From Mytilus californianus (taxonomy: Eukaryota): 64,000 nucleotides of DNA. The position numbers and the translations under genes are program-made. Every line of letters starts with the position of its first letter. The stretch's first letter is position 1. The notes beneath the pieces were generated by a model that worked only from the letters and a program-made list of their open reading frames with translations, had not been told where the DNA came from and searched no databases. Shown here piece by piece: positions 43,391 to 52,242 of the stretch. Location of the stretch: positions 116,250,001-116,314,000 of the forward strand of contig NW_026262712.1 of assembly GCF_021869535.1 (NCBI RefSeq). Reading direction: 5' to 3'.

Positions 43391-43604
43391 CTGCTCTACA
43401 CAAAGATATTTGACGATCACCAGGTACAAATGCAAGAAAAAATTAAAACTGAAATAGTTGCCATTGCTCCGCACCAATTGGTAACAAATAAATTGCAATA
43501 CAATTATCTATCAATATAGAAATAAGGAGATGTAGTACGATTGCTAATGAGACAACTATCCAGCAAGTTTTTTTTATATTTTAAGAGTTATTTAACGAGT
43601 TAGA

Positions 43605-44172
43605 ACACCCGGCCACCGAAAGCTTTATTATTGTGAAGCCTAGGTGGTCGTGTGGTCTAGCGCGTCGGATACAGTGCAGGCGATTTAGTGTCACGATATC
43701 TCAGTAGCATGAGTTCGAATCCCGGCGAGGGAAGAACAAAAAATTTGCGACTACATATTTACATATCTATTATTGTTGGGCTGATGTTTAGACGAGTTGT
43801 ATATACAGAATGTACACAGCCATGTATCACCATCACTGCTGGTGATCCGATGGATAAATCTGCTGTAGAGTTGTCACTGGTTCAGACGTACTTATAAATA
43901 TAATCATTTCTGTGACTGTATCTTGCATTAATTTGTAGGATCCTTTACAATAGATATTTCAGCTGATCTGTACCAATTCCATCTTCATGCCTTATATATC
44001 ATGTACTGTATTACGACGCTAGATTAAAACTAACCAGGAAAGGTAACACCCGGACACCGAAAGCTTTATTTTTAATGCCTAGGTGGTCGAGTGGTCGGGC
44101 ACAGTGTAAGGCGATTTGGTGCCACGATATCTCAGAAGAATGAGTTCGAATCCCGGCCAGGGAAGAACAAAA
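43605..44172 (+). mobile_element. Tandem 439-bp unit: tRNA-derived head, body, hammerhead-like motif, next tRNA head
   Basis: A box TGGTCG(T/A)GTGG at 43645 and 44084; B box GAGTTCGAATCC at 43711 and 44142. Hammerhead-like CTAACCA gg...cc GAAAGCTT at 44030-44066 and a half motif at 43605-43627. Confidence 0.75.
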
Positions 44173-44174
44173 AT

Positions 44175-46950
44175 AAACACTAAAAAGTGTTGAATATCAT
44201 CGCACAAAGATGGAAAACTGAACAGATGATATAAATTATACAATAATTGCAAATATTTCGGCTCAACAAATGGCCTTCCTCAGTGTTAAAAGTTTTAACA
44301 ATACTGATATATAATGTATAAGGTGTAAACATAGATCAGTAATAATACAGGTAAGTTTTGGTCGATTGATTTTAATCCAAAATCCTGAATATCATAATAT
44401 AAACATTAGACTGTAAATTTAATTATTTCTTTCTATTGATTCAATCTGGATGGAGGACACCCAGTGTTTTTATCCAAAACTTCTCCCGATTTTCTCTTTG
44501 CCTATTTTGCCATGTACAATCCTGTTCGATCACAAGGATCTTCATGTGATCAAAATCTTTCAGATTGTGATCTGGTAACCTGAAGTGTTGGCTGACAGGA
44601 ATATACGTTTTTTTTTGTGAGGTCACTCCTGTGGCCATTAAGGCGTTTGTGAAATGGCTGCATAGATTCACCAACATATTGGAGACCACATATAGGACAC
44701 TCAAGAACGTAAATCACGTTTGAGCTTTTGCAGTTGACATTGCAGAAGATCTTGTATGTCTTTTCTGTGGTCTTACTGTGAAATGTTGATGAATGCTGCA
44801 ATTGGTTGCAACATTTGCGCTTATCCCCACAAGGCTGGCAATTACCTACAGTATGGTTAGGTTTGGAAAGGTCAGCACGGACAAGTATATTTCTCAGGCT
44901 GTTAGGTTGTTTGAAGGCAATCATGGGAGGCTCAGGAAAGATTTTGGATAACTTAGAATGTTTCTCGATTGCTGTCCACTGATCACGAATGGTCTTGAAA
45001 CTATTTCTCAGGCATGGCTGGTAGGTGAGCACACATGGGATTCTTTTACTTTTCTGTTTTTCTTTGTAAGTTAGCAGACTGCTTCTGGGGATTGATTCCG
45101 CTTTTCGAAAACAATTTTTGCTGTGTTTGTGTTTATATCCCCTTCTTTTCAAATGTCCTTTGAGCTGCCCCAGACGTTGTTTTGCAGTGTCTTCAGAGGA
45201 GCAGATTCGCCTTATTCTGAGAGCTTGGCTGTATGGAATGCTCTTCGTGCAGTGTGGAGGATGGCAATTTTCAGGCGACAAGTATTAATGAGTATCTGTA
45301 GGTTTAGAGTATATCTGTGTTTATTATACCTACAGAGAGGGTGCTAGATGTATCAAGGAAGTTTATGGTGGAATTAGATGTTTCATGGGTGAATTTGATG
45401 GTAGGGTGTTGATTGTTAGCATTTGTTATAAAAGTTTGTAATTCTTGGTCTCTCTTGTCCCATTTTATGTCAACGTGATCAATGAATCGATACCAGGAAA
45501 GCGGTTTTTCGATGGAGCACTCCAGCAGTTGCTTTTCAACTTTACCCATCCGCATGGGGAATATTCGTATAGAGGGAGGTGACATCCATTGTGACAAGAG
45601 TAGTATTGGCAGGTAGAGGGTTTAAATCCTGCATTTTTAGTAGGTAATCTGTAGAATCTTTTATAAAAGATGGCAAGTTTTCTACATGTGGTCGAAGATA
45701 GTAATCAATGAATTCGGATATTTTTTCGGTGGGATGACCATTAGCTGAGACGATTGGTCTTCCTGGGTTACCAGGTTTATGAATTTTAGGGAGCAGGTAG
45801 AATCGCCCAGGTTTAGAATCTTCAGGTTTTAAATATTTGAGAGTATCTATATCAATGATGTTATTGTCACACATTTCCTTTAAACATTCTGTTATTTTCT
45901 CACTGAATTGGAGGGTGGGGTCCGAATTAAGTTTTTTTTAAAACCGGTCATCATCTAATTGGCGAATGGCCTCTTGGACATAGTTAGATTTGTCCATGAC
46001 GACAACTGCACTCCCTTTGTCTGCAGGTTTAATAACAATGTCGTCATTATCTCTCAAATTTGTTAAAGCCACACGTTCACCAGGTGTTAAATTGTCATAG
46101 GTCTGATTATTTATTTTTACATTTGTAAGTATATCCGTTTTAACATTGTCTATAAATGATTCTAAGGTGGTATTTTTGCTTGGTTTAGGGACCCAGTTAC
46201 TTTTCTTTCTAAATCTATATTCGTTGGAGTCGTCAGAGTCACTATCTGAGGTGGTGCTATCGTCCTCTTTCGATGCAAAATGTTCCTTGATGCGGAGGCT
46301 CCTGGAAAATTATCCAGTTCATCAGACAATTTAGTATCATTCACTGGACCTGGGACTGGACAAAAGTTTAGGCCTCTGGATAGTAATGAAGTTTCGTCCT
46401 CAGTAAGTTGTTTGCTGGAGAGATTGACAACGGTATTGATCTTGTTGCTGAGGACTTGAGGTCTACGTCTGAAATGTCTGTTTTTGGTTTTATCATTATT
46501 TTTTTCTTTTGTACTAGTGGATGGGAAAGAAGTACCATCCCGTTGAAATTTGCATCTTTGTCTGGAGCGGAGAGTGGCGGTCTTAGTGTTGGTTAAATCT
46601 CTCAAGCGCTCTTGGATGTTCTCGAATTCGCTTGCTGTTAGATCTTTTTTGCAAGCGTGAGACAAGGAGTCAAATTGAAGTGTTAAGTTTTTAAGATGTT
46701 CAATACAGTGTCCTCTAAGGAGTATGAGAAGACGGAGGGAACAGTGAAATAGGGTCTGATCCCACCTACGTAGAAATGTATCAGACAGGTTGCCGGTAGT
46801 TTGAGGCAGTGCTTTAATACATAAGCCACTGGGAATAACATTATTGTCAATATAATGACAGTAATTAGAAAGATGATGTCTAGTACTAATTTGTTGTTGT
46901 TTAGTGATCCTTAGTTGTTTGAAATATTGATCATAATTCATTTTGTACAC
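44175..46950 (-). mobile_element. Neptune-clade Penelope-like element, left arm (carries the N-terminus; disrupted)
   Basis: ORF fragments 46162-46950, 45542-45874, 45304-45597, 44550-45281, 44441-44704 are collinear with the right arm. 188-bp deletion at ATGG microhomology, several frameshifts, TAC>TAA stop near 45945. Confidence 0.95.
44251..44283 (-). ncRNA. pLTR hammerhead-like motif of the Neptune left arm
   Basis: Mirror of 49724-49756. Confidence 0.6.
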
Positions 46951-46958
46951 AGTTGGAA

Positions 46959-49879
46959 TATATTGACAATAATGTTATTCCCAGTGGCTTATGTATTAAA
47001 GCACTGCCTCAAACTACCGGCAACCTGTCTGATACATTTCTACGTAGGTGGGATCAGACCCTATTTCACTGTTCCCTCCGTCTTCTCATACTCCTTAGAG
47101 GACACTGTATTGAACATCTTAAAAACTTAACACTTCAATTTGACTCCTTGTCTCACGCTTGCAAAAAAGATCTAACAGCAAGCGAATTCGAGAACATCCA
47201 AGAGCGCTTGAGAGATTTAACCAACACTAAGACCGCCACTCTCCGCTCCAGACAAAGATGCAAATTTCAACGGGATGGTACTTCTTTCCCATCCACTAGT
47301 ACAAAAGAAAAAAATAATAATAAAACCAAAAACAGACATTTCAGACGTAGACCTCAAGTCCTCAGCAACAAGATCAATACCGTTGTCAATCTCTCCAGCA
47401 AACAACTTACTGAGGACGAAACTTCATTACTATCCAGAGGCCTAAACTTTTGTCCAGTCCCAGGTCCAGTGAATGATACTAAATTGTCTGATGAACTGGA
47501 TAATTTTGCCAGGAGCCTCCGCATCAAGGAACATTTTGCATCGAAAGAGGACGATAGCACCACCTCAGATAGTGACTCTGACGACTCCAACGAATATAGA
47601 TTTAGAAAGAAAAGTAACTGGGTCCCTAAACCAAGCAAAAATACCACCTTAGAATCATTTATAGACAATGTTAAAACGGATATACTTACAAATGTAAAAA
47701 TAAATAATCAGACCTATGACAATTTAACACCTGGTGAACGTGTGGCTTTAACAAATTTGAGAGATAATGACGACATTGTTATTAAACCTGCAGACAAAGG
47801 GAGTGCAGTTGTCGTCATGGACAAATCTAACTATGCCCAAGAGGCCATTCGCCAATTATATGATGACCCGTTTTACAAAAAACTTAATTCAGACCCCACC
47901 CTCCAATTCAGTGAGGAAATAACAGAATGTTTAAAGGAAATGTGTGACAATAACATCATTGATATAGATACTCTCAAATATTTAAAACCTGAAGATTCTA
48001 AACCTGGGCGATTCTACCTGCTCCCTAAAATTCATAAACCTGGTAACCCAGGAAGACCAATCGTCTCAGCTAATGGTCATCCCACCGAAAAAATATCCGA
48101 AGTCGTTGATTACTATCTTCGACCACATGTAGAAAACTTGCCATCTTTTATAAAAGATTCTACAGATTATCTACAAAAAATGCAGGATTTAAACCCTCTA
48201 CCTGCCAATACTACTCTTGTCACAATGGATGTCACCTCCCTCTATACGAATATTCCCCATGCGGATGGCATTGAAGCATCTAGAGAAGTTTGGGACTCTC
48301 GATCTCTTAAAATTCCACCTACTGAATGCTTAGTAGAAATGCTTACTATGGTCTTGAAAAAGAACAACTTCACATTCCAAGGAGAACACTATTTACAGAC
48401 AAATGGCACTGCTATGGGTACTAAAATGGCTCCATCTTATGCCAATATATTCATGGGTAAAGTTGAAAAGCAACTGCTGGAGTGCTCCATCAAAAAACCG
48501 CTTTCCTGGTATCGATTCATTGATGTCGTTGACATGAAATGGGACAAGGGAGACCAAGAATTACAAACTTTTATAACAAATGCTAACAATCAACACCCTA
48601 CCATCAAATTCACCCATGAAACATCTAATTCCACCATAAACTTCCTTGATACATCTAGCACCCTCTCTGTAGGTATAATAAACACAGATATATACTCTAA
48701 ACCTACAGATACTCATCAATACTTGTCGCCTGAAAGTTGCCATCCTCCACACTGCACGAAGAGCATTCCATACAGCCAAGCTCTCAGAATAAGGCGAATC
48801 TGCTCCTCTGAAGACACTGCAAAACAACGTCTGGGGCAGCTCAAAGGACATTTGAAAAGAAGGGGATATAAACACAAAAACATAAAAAATAATTTTCGAA
48901 AAGTGGAATCCATCCCCAGAAGCAGTCTGCTAACTTACAAAGAAAAACAGAAAAGTAAAAGAATCCCATGTGTGCTCACCTACCATCCATGCCTGAGAAA
49001 TAGTTTCAAGACCATTCGTGATCATTGGACAGCAATCGAGAAACATTCTTAAGTTATCCAAAATCTTTCCTGAGCCTCCCATGATTGCCTTCAAACAACC
49101 TAACAGCCTGAGAAATATACTTGTCCGTGCTGACCTTTTCAAACCTAACCATACTGTAGGTAATTGCCAGCCTTGTGGGGATAAGCGCTGCAAATGTTGC
49201 AACCAATTGCAGCATTCATCAACATTTCACAGTAAGACCACAAAAAAGCAATACAAGATCTTCTGCAATGTCAACTGCAAAAGCTCAAACGTGATTTACG
49301 TTCTTGAGTGTCCTATATGTGGTCTCCAATATGTTGGTGAATCTATACAGCCATTTCACAAACGCCTTAATGGCCACAGGAGTGACCTCACAAAAAAACC
49401 GTATATTCCTGTCAGCCAACACTTCAGGTTACCAGATCACAATCTGAAAGATTTTGATCACATGAAGATCCTTGTGATCGAACAGGATTGTACATGGCAA
49501 AATAGGCAAAGAGAAAATCGGGAGAAGTTTTGGATAAAAACACTGGGTGTCCTCCATCCAGATTGAATCAATAGAAAGAAATAATTAGATTTACAGTCTA
49601 ATGTTTATATTATGATATTCAGGATTTTGGATTCAAATCAATCGACCAAAACTTACCTGTATTATTACTGATCTATGTTTACACCTTATACATTATATAT
49701 CAGTATTGTTAAAACTTTTAACACTGAGGAAGGCCATTTGTTGAGCCGAAATATTTGCAATTATTGTATAATTTATATCATCTGTTCAGTTTTTCCATCT
49801 TTGTGCGATGATATTCAACACTTTTTAGTGTTTTGTTTTCCATCTATTTATCGGTATTGTTACACAATCTTTTAGACTC
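46959..49879 (+). mobile_element. Neptune-clade Penelope-like element, right arm (RT plus GIY-YIG, one frameshift, lacks first 29 codons)
   Basis: [56 protein letters not shown]....SIPYSQALRIRRIC, CQPCGDKRCKCC, NVIYVLEC..CGLQYVGES, REKFWI. 1-nt insertion near 49050; ends next to (AT)10 at 49880-49899. Confidence 0.95.
49724..49756 (+). ncRNA. pLTR hammerhead-like motif of the Neptune right arm
   Basis: CTGAGGA AGGC catttgttga GCC GAAA TATT with palindromic AAATATTT stem III; stem I pairing is weak. Confidence 0.6.
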
Positions 49880-50039
49880 ATATATATATATATATATATT
49901 GTCATAGACTCTGGTATTGAGATGACTGCGGTAGTCAAATTCGGGGTAAATGTAAAAAAAATGATGATTATGAAGCTCTATATGTGGTGTCTGTGATCTC
50001 TTGTTCATGACTATTTATGGGACCCAATCAGAAAAGTTT

Positions 50040-50290
50040 GTATTGTTAATGGAAAGATCATATTCAATATACCTGTATGTAAATTTAAAATATTCTGTGA
50101 CTGCATCTTACATTAATTTATAGGATCCTTTACAATAGATAATTCAGCTGATCTGTAACAATTCCATCTTCATGCCTTATATATCATGTACTGTGTTACG
50201 ACGCTAGATTGAAACTGACGAGGAAAGGTAACACCCTGCCATCGAAAGCTTTATTTTTAGAGCCTAGGTGGTCGAGTGGTCTATTCGTCT
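50040..50290 (+). mobile_element. Further copy of the tRNA/hammerhead unit with an intact core (50204-50260)
   Basis: ctagattgaaa CTGACGA GG aaa GGT aac ACC ctgcca TC GAAA GC TT tatttttag, then gcctaggTGGTCGAGTGG. Confidence 0.7.
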
Positions 50291-50312
50291 AAATTCGTCT
50301 AAATAACAAAAC

Positions 50313-50710
50313 CGAATCGGGATTCGAACTCATGCTACTGAGATATCGTGGCACCAAATCGTCTTGCACTGTGCCCGACGCGCTAGACCACTAGTATAAT
50401 TTACAGTTGTCACTACATATAGGCAGACATATATTTCTTGGTAGAGGGGTCTAAATACAGCACAAACAACATTTTCTAAAAGACCAAAAAAGTGAAAAAG
50501 TATATTTTAACAATCATTTGACTAGCAGGTCGAACAACGGATGTTCTTAAACCCTGCTGACTGCCATTGGCGATTGCCAAATAAACGGTTCATCAGAACC
50601 GGGTGTTACCTTTCCTCGTCAGTTTTAATTTAGCGTCGTAACACAGTACATCATACATGTATATAAGGCATGAAGATGGAATTGTTAAGGTCAGCTGAAT
50701 TATCTATTGT
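50313..50710 (-). mobile_element. Inverted fragments of the same tRNA/hammerhead unit (tRNA head 50313-50393; body plus 5' half hammerhead 50590-50710)
   Basis: Reverse complement of 43650-43722 and of 43950-44052; CTGACGA intact on the minus strand at 50615-50621. Confidence 0.7.
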
Positions 50711-51047
50711 GGATGCTGTATTTAGACCCCTTTACCAAGAAATTTGTTTTCATTGCACACGTATAAAAATTGCGGTTTTTATTCAACGCAATCATAAGTT
50801 TGAACGTTGTTTTCAATTAAGACTTGTTTATATATATATATCGAATTGTTAAAAGTCTTGAGTATAGACAAATATATCTAAATAAAAAGTCCAATATTGC
50901 CGGATATATGCATTATCCGGCAATATTGGACTTTTTTATTTAGATATATATATATATGAGTTTTCGTTTCGGCAGTTATTACCTTCTTGTAGGAATTAAA
51001 CAAGGACATCTTAAACGCAATACATAAAGTAGGTTTAAGTGTACAGA

Positions 51048-51078
<31 letters not shown>

Positions 51079-51675
51079 CTTTTTCACTTTTTTTGTTTTT
51101 TGGAAAATGTTGTTTGTGCTGTATTTAGACCCCTCTACTAAGAAATTTGTTTTGCATGCACACGTATAAAAATTGCGGTTGTATTCCAATTCGTTTTTTT
51201 CAATTTAGACTTGTTTATATTTTTTCGTTTTGGCTTGTAATATATTTGCCTTAAGGTTTATATGATCCGTTCATCCTATTTTGACTCCTCAAAATTCAAG
51301 AGTCTATCCTAAATTGAGGTAAATTGTTGGGCTTTCCAAATACCGTTTCGATTCCTCACATCACTGAAGAGACATTATTTGTCGAAATCCGGATATGGTG
51401 TACAAAAACCTGTGTACCTTTTGTTTGCGGTATATCATCTTTTCCGCAAGTTTATTGTTTTTCTGTTTAGTATTGAATTTGAAATTAAGATCCATTTATA
51501 ACATCGGTGATCCGTTTATTTGGCAATCGCCAATGGCAGTCAGCAGGGTTTAAGAACATTTGTTGTTCGACCTGTTAGTCAAATGCGTTTTGTTAAAATA
51601 TATTTTTTCACTTTTTCGGTCTTTTGGAAAATGTTGTTTGTGCTGTATTTAGACCCCTTTATTCCAACAAGAAAT
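50433..51675. repeat. Inverted repeat pair (50433-50588 / 51512-51675) plus additional copies of its gctgtatttagacccc segment
   Basis: ggtctaaatacagcacaaacaacattt...ccctgctgactgccattggcgattgccaaataaacgg matches in reverse complement. Confidence 0.8.
51358..51401 (+). ncRNA. Apparently intact type I hammerhead ribozyme (predicted cleavage 3' of A51395)
   Basis: Stem I acatca/tggtgt, core CTGAAGA, stem II GAC-attattt-GTC, GAAA, palindromic stem III ATCCGGAT, AUA triplet. Confidence 0.8.
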
Positions 51676-52242
51676 TTGTTTTGCATGCACACGTATATAA
51701 ATTGCGGTTTTTATCCAACGCAATCATAGGTTTAAACGTTTTTTTCAATTTACACTTGCATATATATATATATGTACAAGTCTAAATTGAAAACAACGTT
51801 CAAACCTATGATATATATAGATATATACAAGTCTAAATTGAAAACAACGTTTGTATTGTTAATGGAAAGAACATATTCAATATACCTGTATGAAAATTAA
51901 ATGATATAGCTTCTTTGATTTAACCCAAACAAAAACAAAAACGTACACATTAGGATATTTCCAGGAGAAGACCACCCACCCCTCTCGCTTCACTCATTTG
52001 TGGATGCATTACGCATTATATATACAAAGACATATACTTTTCGACAATTTACGCTCCTGGAGGTCTAATAATCTTGGATGCCTAGTAGCATTGTCTCTTG
52101 AATGAAAACAGGTTTAAATATGGATAAATATATATATATATATTTAGACTTATAGATTGCTTAACAATGTAATTTATTTTAACACACTATTTAGTATGTA
52201 AATATTAGAATATTTAAAATATTTTCAAAACGATAAAAATAA

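What the first reader, a model, noticed from the sequence alone, without database searches (positions are those of the whole stretch)
44175..49833. 5.7-kb head-to-head palindrome made of almost an entire Neptune element
Seen: arms 44175-46854 (-) and 46959-49833 (+) are near-identical by eye, separated by a 104-bp spacer that holds the only copy of the start (ATG 46941, MNYDQYFKQLRITKQQQISTRHHLSNYCH). Both 3' ends face outward. Lesions are complementary: the left arm has the N-terminus and an intact KHSKLSK junction but a 188-bp deletion (right-arm 48269-48456, ATGG microhomology), while the right arm has the RT core but a +1 frameshift near 49050. The consensus reconstructs an ORF of about 897 aa. 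Established: PLEs form inverted pLTR structures, usually short. Inference: an extreme fold-back or template-switch product that could form a cruciform or about 2.7-kb dsRNA and act as a silencing trigger for the family.
Basis: partly seen in the sequence, partly recalled or inferred. Interest (0 to 1): 0.75.

Follow-up and report, generated by a model that had tools for sequence, protein, structure and literature searches.

The report
Head-to-head pair of mussel Penelope-like retrotransposons
Two dead, nearly full-length copies of a Penelope-like jumping gene sit nose to nose in a mussel genome; the layout is the usual insertion scar of this element class and is unusual only for how long both arms are.

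Summary
Arms 44175-46854 (-) and 46959-49833 (+) are 98.6% alike around a 104-nt centre that belongs to the left copy.

Corrections:
- The right copy runs to the family's true 3' end at 49884, inside a (TA)n tract.
- The left copy lacks the family's last 51 nt.
- The left copy carries four frame-breaking indels, not one.

The element encodes RT plus a C-terminal GIY-YIG endonuclease with a CX4CxxC linker, so it is a canonical Penelope-like element (PLE) of Neptune type. The nearest proteins (94-95% identity) are from Mytilus edulis.

The palindrome is not exotic. About half of the sampled copies of this family have an inverted 5'-truncated partner joined head to head by 0-12 nt of microhomology. 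In 12 of 12 such pairs an 86-nt "tail" sits on exactly one arm. The literature describes this as standard PLE architecture.

The two arms are sister copies. They share variants that are absent or rare in other copies, and nearly all of their differences are private to one arm.

The locus is exceptional only in arm length: it holds two of the eight places in the genome that keep the element's 5' end.

No evidence supports a silencing-trigger role. There is no promoter region, and only eight RNA reads were laid. Short-read contigs could not verify the central junction. Other first-reader and follow-up notes of this scan describe similar PLE pairs elsewhere in this genome.

The parts
44175..46962 (-). 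Left PLE copy. It keeps 21 nt of 5'UTR and the ATG (46941). It is 5'-truncated about 150-170 nt short of full-length copies and 3'-truncated by 51 nt, with no tail. The reading frame is broken at about 46306, at about 45549 (188-bp loss), at about 45315 and at about 44609-16.
46959..49884 (+). Right PLE copy. It is 5'-truncated 104 nt further in than the left copy, so it has no start codon. The ORF is open from 46953 to 49052 (RT), followed by one 1-nt frame break near 49049 and then the GIY-YIG ORF 49018-49566. It has the canonical 3' end ...TTTTAGACTCATATA and no tail.
46959..46962 (.). Head-to-head junction: 4-nt TATA microhomology shared by the 5' ends of both copies. The junction 31-mer is unique in the 1.65-Gb assembly.
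46855..46958 (-). The '104-nt spacer'. It is the left copy's extra 5' sequence (the first 29 codons plus the start of the 5'UTR) and is collinear with the 5' ends of the other long copies.
49876..49898 (.). (TA)n tract at the right end. This is the family's usual target microsatellite.
43600..44174 (+). Left flank: about 1.3 units of a ~440-bp tandem repeat with a tRNA-like module, broken mid-unit where it meets the truncated left arm. It is not part of the PLE.
49899..50089 (+). Right flank: a fragment of another dispersed repeat, broken mid-element at the (TA)n. It is not contiguous with the left flank, so no target-site duplication can be read.

Best explanation
This is a genuine genomic head-to-head pair of two sister, dead copies of one young (TA)n-targeting Penelope-like retrotransposon (RT plus C-terminal GIY-YIG, Neptune-type linker) in a Mytilus-like mussel. 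Both copies were laid down in a single integration event. The confidence given (0.85) is for this general claim.

Preferred mechanism (inferred; about 55:35 over fold-back):
1. The element's endonuclease cut both strands of a (TA)n tract.
2. Each 3'-OH primed reverse transcription of element RNA inward from the element's 3' end.
3. The two cDNAs, both of which unusually got almost to the 5' end, were joined at a 4-nt TATA microhomology and filled in. This gives two arms with 3' ends outward.

Since then each arm has decayed independently. The left arm has also lost its outer 51 nt and the expected tail in a later deletion or rearrangement against a neighbouring tandem repeat.

Shown here: the anatomy, the family-wide recurrence of the layout, the sister relationship of the arms and the microhomology. 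Inferred: the double priming and the later deletion.

The structure has no demonstrated function. It is an insertion scar.
For: Identity of the element:
- Pfam RVT_1 and GIY-YIG.
- A CX4CxxC linker and CCHH residues conserved with ~900-aa relatives.
- Nearest proteins 94-95% identical, from Mytilus edulis.

Recurrence of the layout:
- Of 27 distinct loci holding long copies, 12 have a head-to-head partner and 3 more have an inverted stub.
- In a length-unbiased sample taken through the 3' end, 6-7 of 13 new loci have one.
- Junctions show 0-12 nt of overlap or 1-2 nt of filler.

One concerted event rather than two insertions:
- In 12 of 12 pairs with both outer ends visible, the 86-nt tail sits on exactly one arm. 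The chance of this is 1.2e-4 if the arms were independent.
- The window's arms share variants that are absent from all 38 other copies at one site and carried by 1 of 38 at a second (element positions 2557 and 2606), and absent from all 5 other long copies at positions 126 and 338.
- Of the other 37 differences, nearly all are private to one arm. Three tested private k-mers, including the 188-bp deletion joint, are unique in the genome.

Literature:
- An inverted 5'-truncated copy adjacent at the 5' end and a one-sided tail are described as standard PLE features (PMC8557442, PMC3846280).
- A purified PLE protein cleaves and extends both target strands in vitro (PMC11167929).

Geometry: priming from both ends of a break gives exactly minus-left / plus-right with 3' ends outward (inference).
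Against: - Near-full-length copies are very rare. Only 8 places in the genome keep the 5' 840 bp at 98% or more, and two of them are these arms. Two independent cDNAs both getting that far is unlikely unless the arms are coupled.
- Across 21 pairs the two 5' ends are closer than under random re-pairing (p about 0.02). This fits a fold-back copy at least as well as double priming.
- No target-site duplication can be read, and the flanks are two unrelated broken repeats.
- The left arm's outer end is missing, so the one-tail rule cannot be checked at this locus.
- The central junction was not confirmed by reads. Logan contigs of three DNA runs are collapsed family contigs, and they run on from 46962 into the canonical 5'UTR.
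- The strongly uneven spread of arm differences (1 in 876 inner bases against 36 in 1813 outer bases) is not explained by this model.
Confidence: 0.85

Rival explanations
1. Fold-back (self-priming) product, a sub-mechanism within the single-event reading. One target-primed cDNA reached 21 nt upstream of the ATG. Its 3' TATA end then folded back onto an internal TATA 104 nt behind and copied the cDNA itself outward, making the second arm.
For: - The arms' 5' ends are only about 104 nt apart, although copies this long are very rare.
- 10 of 21 pairs have 5' ends within 300 nt of each other, more than random re-pairing gives (p about 0.02).
- Self-complementary TATA sits at the joint.
- Short inverted stubs occur that start next to the main copy's truncation point (L023, L025, L027, L065, L070).
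- Arkhipova et al. proposed self-priming for PLE head-to-head repeats (PMC3846280).
Against: A copied arm should inherit the first arm's outer end. Instead, 12 of 12 pairs have the tail on one arm only. The tailed arm is the shorter one in 5 of 12 pairs, which simple fold-back cannot give. Eleven of 21 pairs have 5' ends 570-2500 nt apart.
Confidence: 0.3
2. Assembly artefact. A false inverted join of two separate copies or haplotypes, or a chimeric palindromic long read.
For: - The junction 31-mer occurs once in the assembly, and no contig of three DNA runs was seen to cross it.
- The inner 877 bp of the arms are almost identical.
- PLE inverted structures are known to trouble assemblies (PMC8557442).
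Against: - The arms differ by 37 substitutions and 7 indels that are private and unique in the genome, so they are two distinct molecules' worth of sequence, not one read folded.
- The joint has the same microhomology-type anatomy as at least 20 other pairs on other chromosomes.
- A false join needs overlap, and there is none at a head-to-head joint.
- The contig evidence is uninformative rather than negative: contigs that fit both arms were laid on one only, and rare branches are dropped.
Confidence: 0.05
3. Two independent insertions. A second copy happened to land in inverted orientation exactly at the 5' end of an older one.
For: The family targets (TA)-rich sequence, and the joint is TATA.
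Against: - The arms share variants that are absent or rare in other copies.
- There is no (TA)n, tail or 3' end at the centre. Both 5' ends meet there, which target-primed insertion of a second copy would not give.
- The one-tail rule across pairs (p = 1.2e-4) argues against independent events.
Confidence: 0.03
4. The palindrome is, in addition, a working source of hairpin RNA that feeds siRNA/piRNA silencing of the family.
For: - A read-through transcript would fold into about 2.7 kb of near-perfect dsRNA.
Against: - Both copies lack the family's upstream region (loose end at 46962).
- One RNA-seq run gave 8 reads at 98% or more, none over the central 4 kb.
- Hundreds of other inverted pairs of the same family exist, so this locus would not be special.
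Confidence: 0.08

Closest known systems
Canonical EN+ Penelope-like elements with complex tandem/inverted insertions (Evgen'ev & Arkhipova 2005; Arkhipova 2006; Craig et al. 2021, PMC8557442, fig. 2)
   Same: [quoted passage not shown]
- Heavy 5' truncation.
- An inverted 5'-truncated copy abutting the 5' end, so that inverted repeats flank the unit.
- A short extension ('tail') at one end only.
- AT-rich / (TA)n targets.
- Full-length copies preceded by a partial direct copy (pLTR), as in L003 and L004.
   Different: - The tail is 86 nt here, against 30-40 nt as described.
- No hammerhead ribozyme was detected by Rfam in the window (40-54 kb) or in the pLTR-bearing loci L003/L004.
- At this locus there is no pLTR at all, only two bare arms, both almost full length.
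Adineta vaga Pen2/Pen3 inverted structures (Arkhipova et al. 2013, PMC3846280)
   Same: Head-to-head inverted arms with palindromic or microhomology joints, a one-sided tail, and assembly difficulties.
   Different: The rotifer inverted parts are mostly pLTR-sized (about 200 bp) and flanked by 8-10-bp TSDs. Here the arms are 2.8 and 2.9 kb and no TSD can be read.
L1 twin priming (Ostertag & Kazazian 2001; from my own knowledge, not checked here)
   Same: Use of the second target strand as a primer during one retrotransposition event, with the joint resolved by microhomology.
   Different: Twin priming starts the second cDNA internally on the same RNA and yields an inversion with only one 3' end. 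Here both arms start at the element's 3' end and face outward.
Both-strand cleavage and extension by a purified Poseidon PLE protein (Frangieh et al. 2024, PMC11167929)
   Same: It gives the biochemical basis for two outward-facing cDNAs at an AT-rich target, and for initiation at defined internal RNA sites.
   Different: It concerns a different clade (Penelope/Poseidon, lizard). Complete inverted insertions were not reconstituted in vitro.

Membership tests
Penelope-like elements, EN+ (canonical, C-terminal endonuclease) | Reverse transcriptase domain | tested here: met
   RVT_1 E = 2.8e-8, above the gathering score, at residues 361-524 of the right-arm ORF. 3080 homologues, most carrying PF00078.
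Penelope-like elements, EN+ (canonical, C-terminal endonuclease) | GIY-YIG endonuclease C-terminal to the RT, with the CCHH residues | tested here: met
   GIY-YIG E = 4e-6, above cut-off, in ORF 49018-49566. The CxxC ... H ... H columns are conserved with 10 relatives of about 900 aa.
Penelope-like elements, EN+ (canonical, C-terminal endonuclease) | pLTR / partial tandem, inverted 5'-truncated partner, one-sided tail | tested here: met
   Family level: pLTR pieces upstream of L003 and L004; inverted partners at about half of loci; tail on one arm in 12 of 12 pairs. At this locus only the inverted partner is present.
Penelope-like elements, EN+ (canonical, C-terminal endonuclease) | Hammerhead ribozyme motif in the pLTR | tested here: not met
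   No Rfam hammerhead at E <= 1 in window 40-54 kb or in L003/L004. Minimal or dimeric PLE hammerheads can escape these models. The feature is typical of PLEs, not obligatory (Naiads lack it, PMC8557442).
Neptune clade of PLEs | [quoted passage not shown] | tested here: met
   C-GDKR-C-KC-C, preceded by CQPC, lies upstream of the GIY-YIG domain and is conserved in relatives. The motif is shared with Nematis and Naiad, so it is not sufficient for Neptune on its own (PMC8557442).
Neptune clade of PLEs | Placement of the RT within Neptune in a phylogeny with reference elements | not tested
The N-terminal-EN clades (Naiad, Chlamys) are excluded by domain order. Penelope/Poseidon is unlikely because of the linker motif.

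The most novel reading that the evidence does not exclude
The strict 'one tail per pair' rule may reflect a fixed odd-numbered stagger of the two endonuclease nicks in (TA)n. One 3'-OH would then end in T and can only pair at the RNA site GACUC-A-UAUA (no tail). The other would end in A and can only pair at GACUC-UAUAU, 86 nt further on (tail). If so, every insertion of this family is in principle two-armed, and 'single' copies are pairs with one arm of zero length. The window's palindrome would then be the rare case where both polymerisations ran almost to completion. That would make it a natural read-out of a dimeric, two-strand PLE integration complex.
Probability: 0.15. Interest if true: 0.55.

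Novelty: new member of a known kind. Interest (0 to 1): 0.28.

Why it matters
Mainly as a calibration: a striking 5.7-kb palindrome turns out to be the ordinary integration scar of a Penelope-like element. It should be annotated as two dead copies of one repeat family, not as a new structure or a regulatory locus.

For specialists in PLE integration, a mechanism that is still unresolved, this young and abundant mussel family offers many clean natural products. The one-sided 86-nt tail in 12 of 12 pairs, the microhomology joints and the partial coupling of arm lengths constrain models (double-strand priming against self-priming) and could guide in vitro work.

Long near-perfect inverted repeats are also fragile sites and assembly hazards, so this locus is worth checking with long reads.

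Tried and rejected
1. **Read-level check of the junction.** The only runs served were Logan short-read contigs plus one raw RNA run. The contigs are collapsed family sequence; those reaching the centre run on from 46962 into the canonical 5'UTR, and none was laid on 47040-47235 in any run. This gives no verdict either way.

2. **Arm-to-arm gene conversion as the cause of the near-identical inner 877 bp.** Considered but not adopted. Only 2 shared derived sites lie there, and an unlinked copy (L002) shows the same 5'-low / 3'-high pattern.

3. **Import of variants from paralogues by ectopic conversion.** Rejected: the tested private k-mers are unique in the genome.

4. **Search for the missing left-arm end and tail elsewhere in the window.** Absent.

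5. **Search for an empty site or TSD through paralogues of the flanks.** The flanks are two unrelated repeats, both broken mid-element.

6. **L002 as a possible allelic copy.** Rejected: it is a separate (TA)n-flanked single insertion on another chromosome.

7. **Hammerhead search.** Nothing found.

8. **tRNA genes in the flanks.** None found by ARAGORN.

The 897-aa figure is arithmetic only. I did not use the large representative-protein search, because the family scans and the word search settled the protein's identity.
Full report
**Observation**

The repeat finder recovers seven collinear inverted segments (96-100% complementary) that together pair 44169-46854 with 46959-49839, with 104 nt between the innermost arms. 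Base skews flip sign at the centre. A global alignment of the arms gives 37 substitutions in 2689 aligned bases and seven indels. One indel is the 188-bp gap in the left arm, which is flanked by a 4-nt CCAT/ATGG microhomology.
- On the minus strand an ORF starts at 46950/46941 (MYK-MNYDQYF...).
- On the plus strand an ORF of 699 aa runs 46953-49052, followed after a frame break by 49018-49566.

**What the sequence is**

The plus-strand ORF carries RVT_1 and the downstream ORF carries GIY-YIG, both above Pfam's cut-offs. RT followed by a C-terminal GIY-YIG domain is the defining architecture of canonical EN+ Penelope-like elements (PMC8557442).

An alignment of the endonuclease ORF with ten relatives of about 900 aa shows two conserved features:
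- A Cys cluster in the linker (CQPC-GDKR-C-KC-C, which fits CX2-5CxxC).
- The CxxC...H...H residues inside GIY-YIG.

The linker motif marks Neptune and Nematis (and Naiad) as against Penelope/Poseidon (PMC8557442). A Neptune label is therefore reasonable, but I did not test it by phylogeny.

The closest database proteins are 94-95% identical and come from Mytilus edulis. More distant ones are from M. trossulus, oysters, scallops and a newt. The assembly is 1.65 Gb in 175 contigs. RNA runs labelled mollusc metagenome hold the element, which fits a Mytilus-like mussel as host.

**True limits of the two copies**

I compared the outer ends of some 40 copies. The family's 3' end is ...TTTTAGACTCATATA followed by (TA)n. 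The right copy therefore ends at 49884, not 49833, and sits in a (TA)n tract that runs to about 49898.

Many copies carry a further 86 nt (ATTTTCCCTG...TTATAGACTC) before the (TA)n. In the two pLTR-bearing long copies (L003, L004) these 86 nt are the first bases of the unit, directly after the upstream partial copy. They correspond to the 'tail' of the PLE literature (PMC8557442, PMC3846280).

The left copy stops at 44175, 51 nt short of the family's end. Neither its missing end nor a tail exists anywhere in the window.

At the centre, contigs from three DNA runs follow the left copy up to 46962 and then continue into the sequence that L003 and L004 show to be the canonical 5'UTR (loose ends). 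From this:
- The left copy is itself 5'-truncated, 21 nt upstream of its ATG.
- The '104-nt spacer' is simply the stretch by which the left copy reaches further 5' than the right one.
- TATA at 46959-46962 is microhomology common to both.

**Lesions**

Relative to the other copies, the left copy has these changes:
- a 1-nt loss near 46306;
- the 188-bp loss;
- a 2-nt loss near 45315;
- an in-frame 3-nt loss near 44817;
- a 1-nt gain near 44609-16.

Its frame falls into at least five pieces.

The right copy lacks the first 29 codons and has one extra base near 49049. The 897-aa estimate follows from lengths alone and agrees with relatives of 899-930 aa.

**Is the palindrome unusual?**

No, not in kind.

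A search of the whole assembly with the right copy scored 40 of at least 1798 candidates. Among 27 distinct loci holding long copies, 12 have an inverted partner abutting the 5' end and three more have a short inverted stub.

A second sample, taken through the 3'-terminal 245 bp and therefore not biased towards long copies, gave an inverted partner or stub at 6-7 of 13 new loci. The joints show 0-12 nt of overlap or 1-2 nt of filler.

[quoted passage not shown] Other first-reader and follow-up notes of this scan describe comparable PLE pairs elsewhere in the same genome.

What is exceptional here is arm length. Only eight places in the genome keep the element's first 840 bp at 98% identity or more, and two of them are these arms. 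The next-largest pair I saw has arms of about 1.8 kb.

**One event or two?**

Three lines point to one event.

1. The arms share variants that are absent or rare in other copies. At element position 2557 the variant is in 0 of 38 other copies. At 2606 it is in 1 of 38. At 126 and 338 it is in 0 of 5.
2. Of the remaining differences nearly all are private to one arm, with the other arm agreeing with all other copies. The private k-mers I tested, including the deletion joint, occur once in the genome. This is independent decay of two sister copies.
3. Across the family, every one of 12 pairs with both outer ends in view has the tail on exactly one arm. Among single copies 13 of 21 have a tail. 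Under independence the chance of 12 of 12 is 1.2e-4.

The central junction's 31-mer is unique in the assembly, so the locus has not been copied further.

**Mechanism**

Priming from both 3'-OH ends of a cut target gives exactly the observed geometry: a minus copy on the left, a plus copy on the right, both 3' ends outward and both 5' ends meeting in the middle. A purified PLE protein has been shown to cleave and extend both strands, unlike R2 or L1 (PMC11167929).

The alternative is that the first cDNA folded back on itself and served as template for the second arm, as proposed for rotifer PLEs (PMC3846280). It is favoured by two observations:
- The arms end close together (104 nt) despite the rarity of long copies.
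- There is an excess of pairs with closely spaced 5' ends (10 of 21 within 300 nt; p about 0.02 against random re-pairing).

It is disfavoured by the one-tail rule. A copied arm should inherit the first arm's end, and the tailed arm is the shorter one in 5 of 12 pairs.

I put double priming at roughly 55%, fold-back at roughly 30-35%, and everything else at about 10%.

A speculative refinement follows from the sequences. The tail-less site reads GACTC-A-(TA)n and the tailed site reads GACTC-(TA)n. A (TA)n primer must therefore end in T for the first and in A for the second. Two nicks an odd number of bases apart would always give one of each.

**Things the model does not explain**

1. The differences between the arms are very unevenly spread: 1 in the inner 876 aligned bases against 36 in the outer 1813 (Fisher p = 1e-5).
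   - Arm-to-arm gene conversion near the centre is the obvious idea.
   - However, only two shared derived sites lie there.
   - The unlinked single copy L002 is also nearly identical to both arms in that stretch, yet 1.6-1.9% different further 3'.
   - I leave this open.
2. There is no target-site duplication.
   - The left arm abuts a ~440-bp tandem repeat mid-unit.
   - The right (TA)n abuts another dispersed repeat broken mid-element.
   - A later deletion or rearrangement on the left is the simplest reading.

**Assembly artefact?**

Logan contigs from three DNA runs are collapsed family sequence and do not address the joint. The arguments against an artefact are indirect:
- The two arms have different private variants and indels.
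- The joint has the same anatomy as about 20 others on other chromosomes.
- There is no overlap that could cause a false join.

I keep 5% for this.

**Silencing trigger?**

Untested, and so far unsupported.
- Both copies lack the family's upstream region. By analogy with other PLEs (PMC8557442, PMC2377424 title/abstract) a promoter would be expected there.
- In one raw RNA-seq run of the same species label, 8 reads were laid at 98% or more, none between 44688 and 48607. Only about 6% of that run was read.
- With very many inverted pairs of this family in the genome, this locus would not be a privileged source.

**Verdict**

This is a real, correctly described structure. It is an ordinary Penelope-like insertion product with unusually long arms, and so a new instance of a known kind.

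Noticed in passing
window 43600-44173 and 50080-50380: A ~440-bp tandemly repeated unit with a tRNA-like module (GGTTCGAATCCCGG box) lies on both sides of the palindrome. Elsewhere in the genome it forms arrays of 10-20 units (e.g. C99:34.27 Mb, C2:44.22 Mb). ARAGORN calls no tRNA and Rfam finds no hammerhead at E <= 1. Another first-reader note (s1-328156) proposes a Pol III-driven retrozyme here.
   Followed up: partly
L023, L025, L027 (C154:50.20 Mb, C113:0.23 Mb, C121:102.20 Mb) versus L024 (C110:33.00 Mb): Three loci share the same inverted 85-nt stub (element 1408-1492) next to a copy starting at 1420. This is the same joint as in the full palindrome L024. They also share at least 120 nt of unrelated sequence upstream, but their 3' flanks differ. 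This may be a chimeric sub-family that carries a head-to-head joint as part of its transposed unit.
   Followed up: partly
window 46959-47835 / 45978-46854: The inner third of the palindrome is almost identical between the arms (1 substitution and 1 indel), whereas the outer two-thirds differ by 2%. Six differences cluster at 47836-47916, right at the boundary. Several differences private to opposite arms lie on adjacent bases (48525/6, 48883/4, 48891/2).
   Followed up: partly
window 50433-51900; also flanks of L002, L014, L016, L058, L069, L070: A MITE-like repeat with a central (TA)n (palindrome 51723-51812, which gives weak sub-threshold miRNA-family hits in Rfam) recurs as the sequence next to the (TA)n target of this PLE family at many loci (AAGTCTAAATTGAAAACAACGTTCAAACC...).
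   Followed up: no
window 49899-50089: This is a fragment of a dispersed repeat with at least 944 candidate copies (84-88% identity). It starts exactly at the (TA)n with TTGTCATAGACTC, an 8-mer (ATAGACTC) that it shares with the end of the PLE tail. This may be coincidence or a microhomology joint.
   Followed up: no
e.g. C143:103249442-103254332, C132:65911470-65917794: A second, more abundant PLE family is about 71% identical to this one over element positions 424-842. It also often occurs as nearby copies on opposite strands.
   Followed up: no
Near-identical 31-mers of this element (55-63% of sampled words) are held by runs of three differently labelled organisms (A, B, C). The family is therefore shared, nearly unchanged, among closely related taxa or hybridising species.
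   Followed up: no
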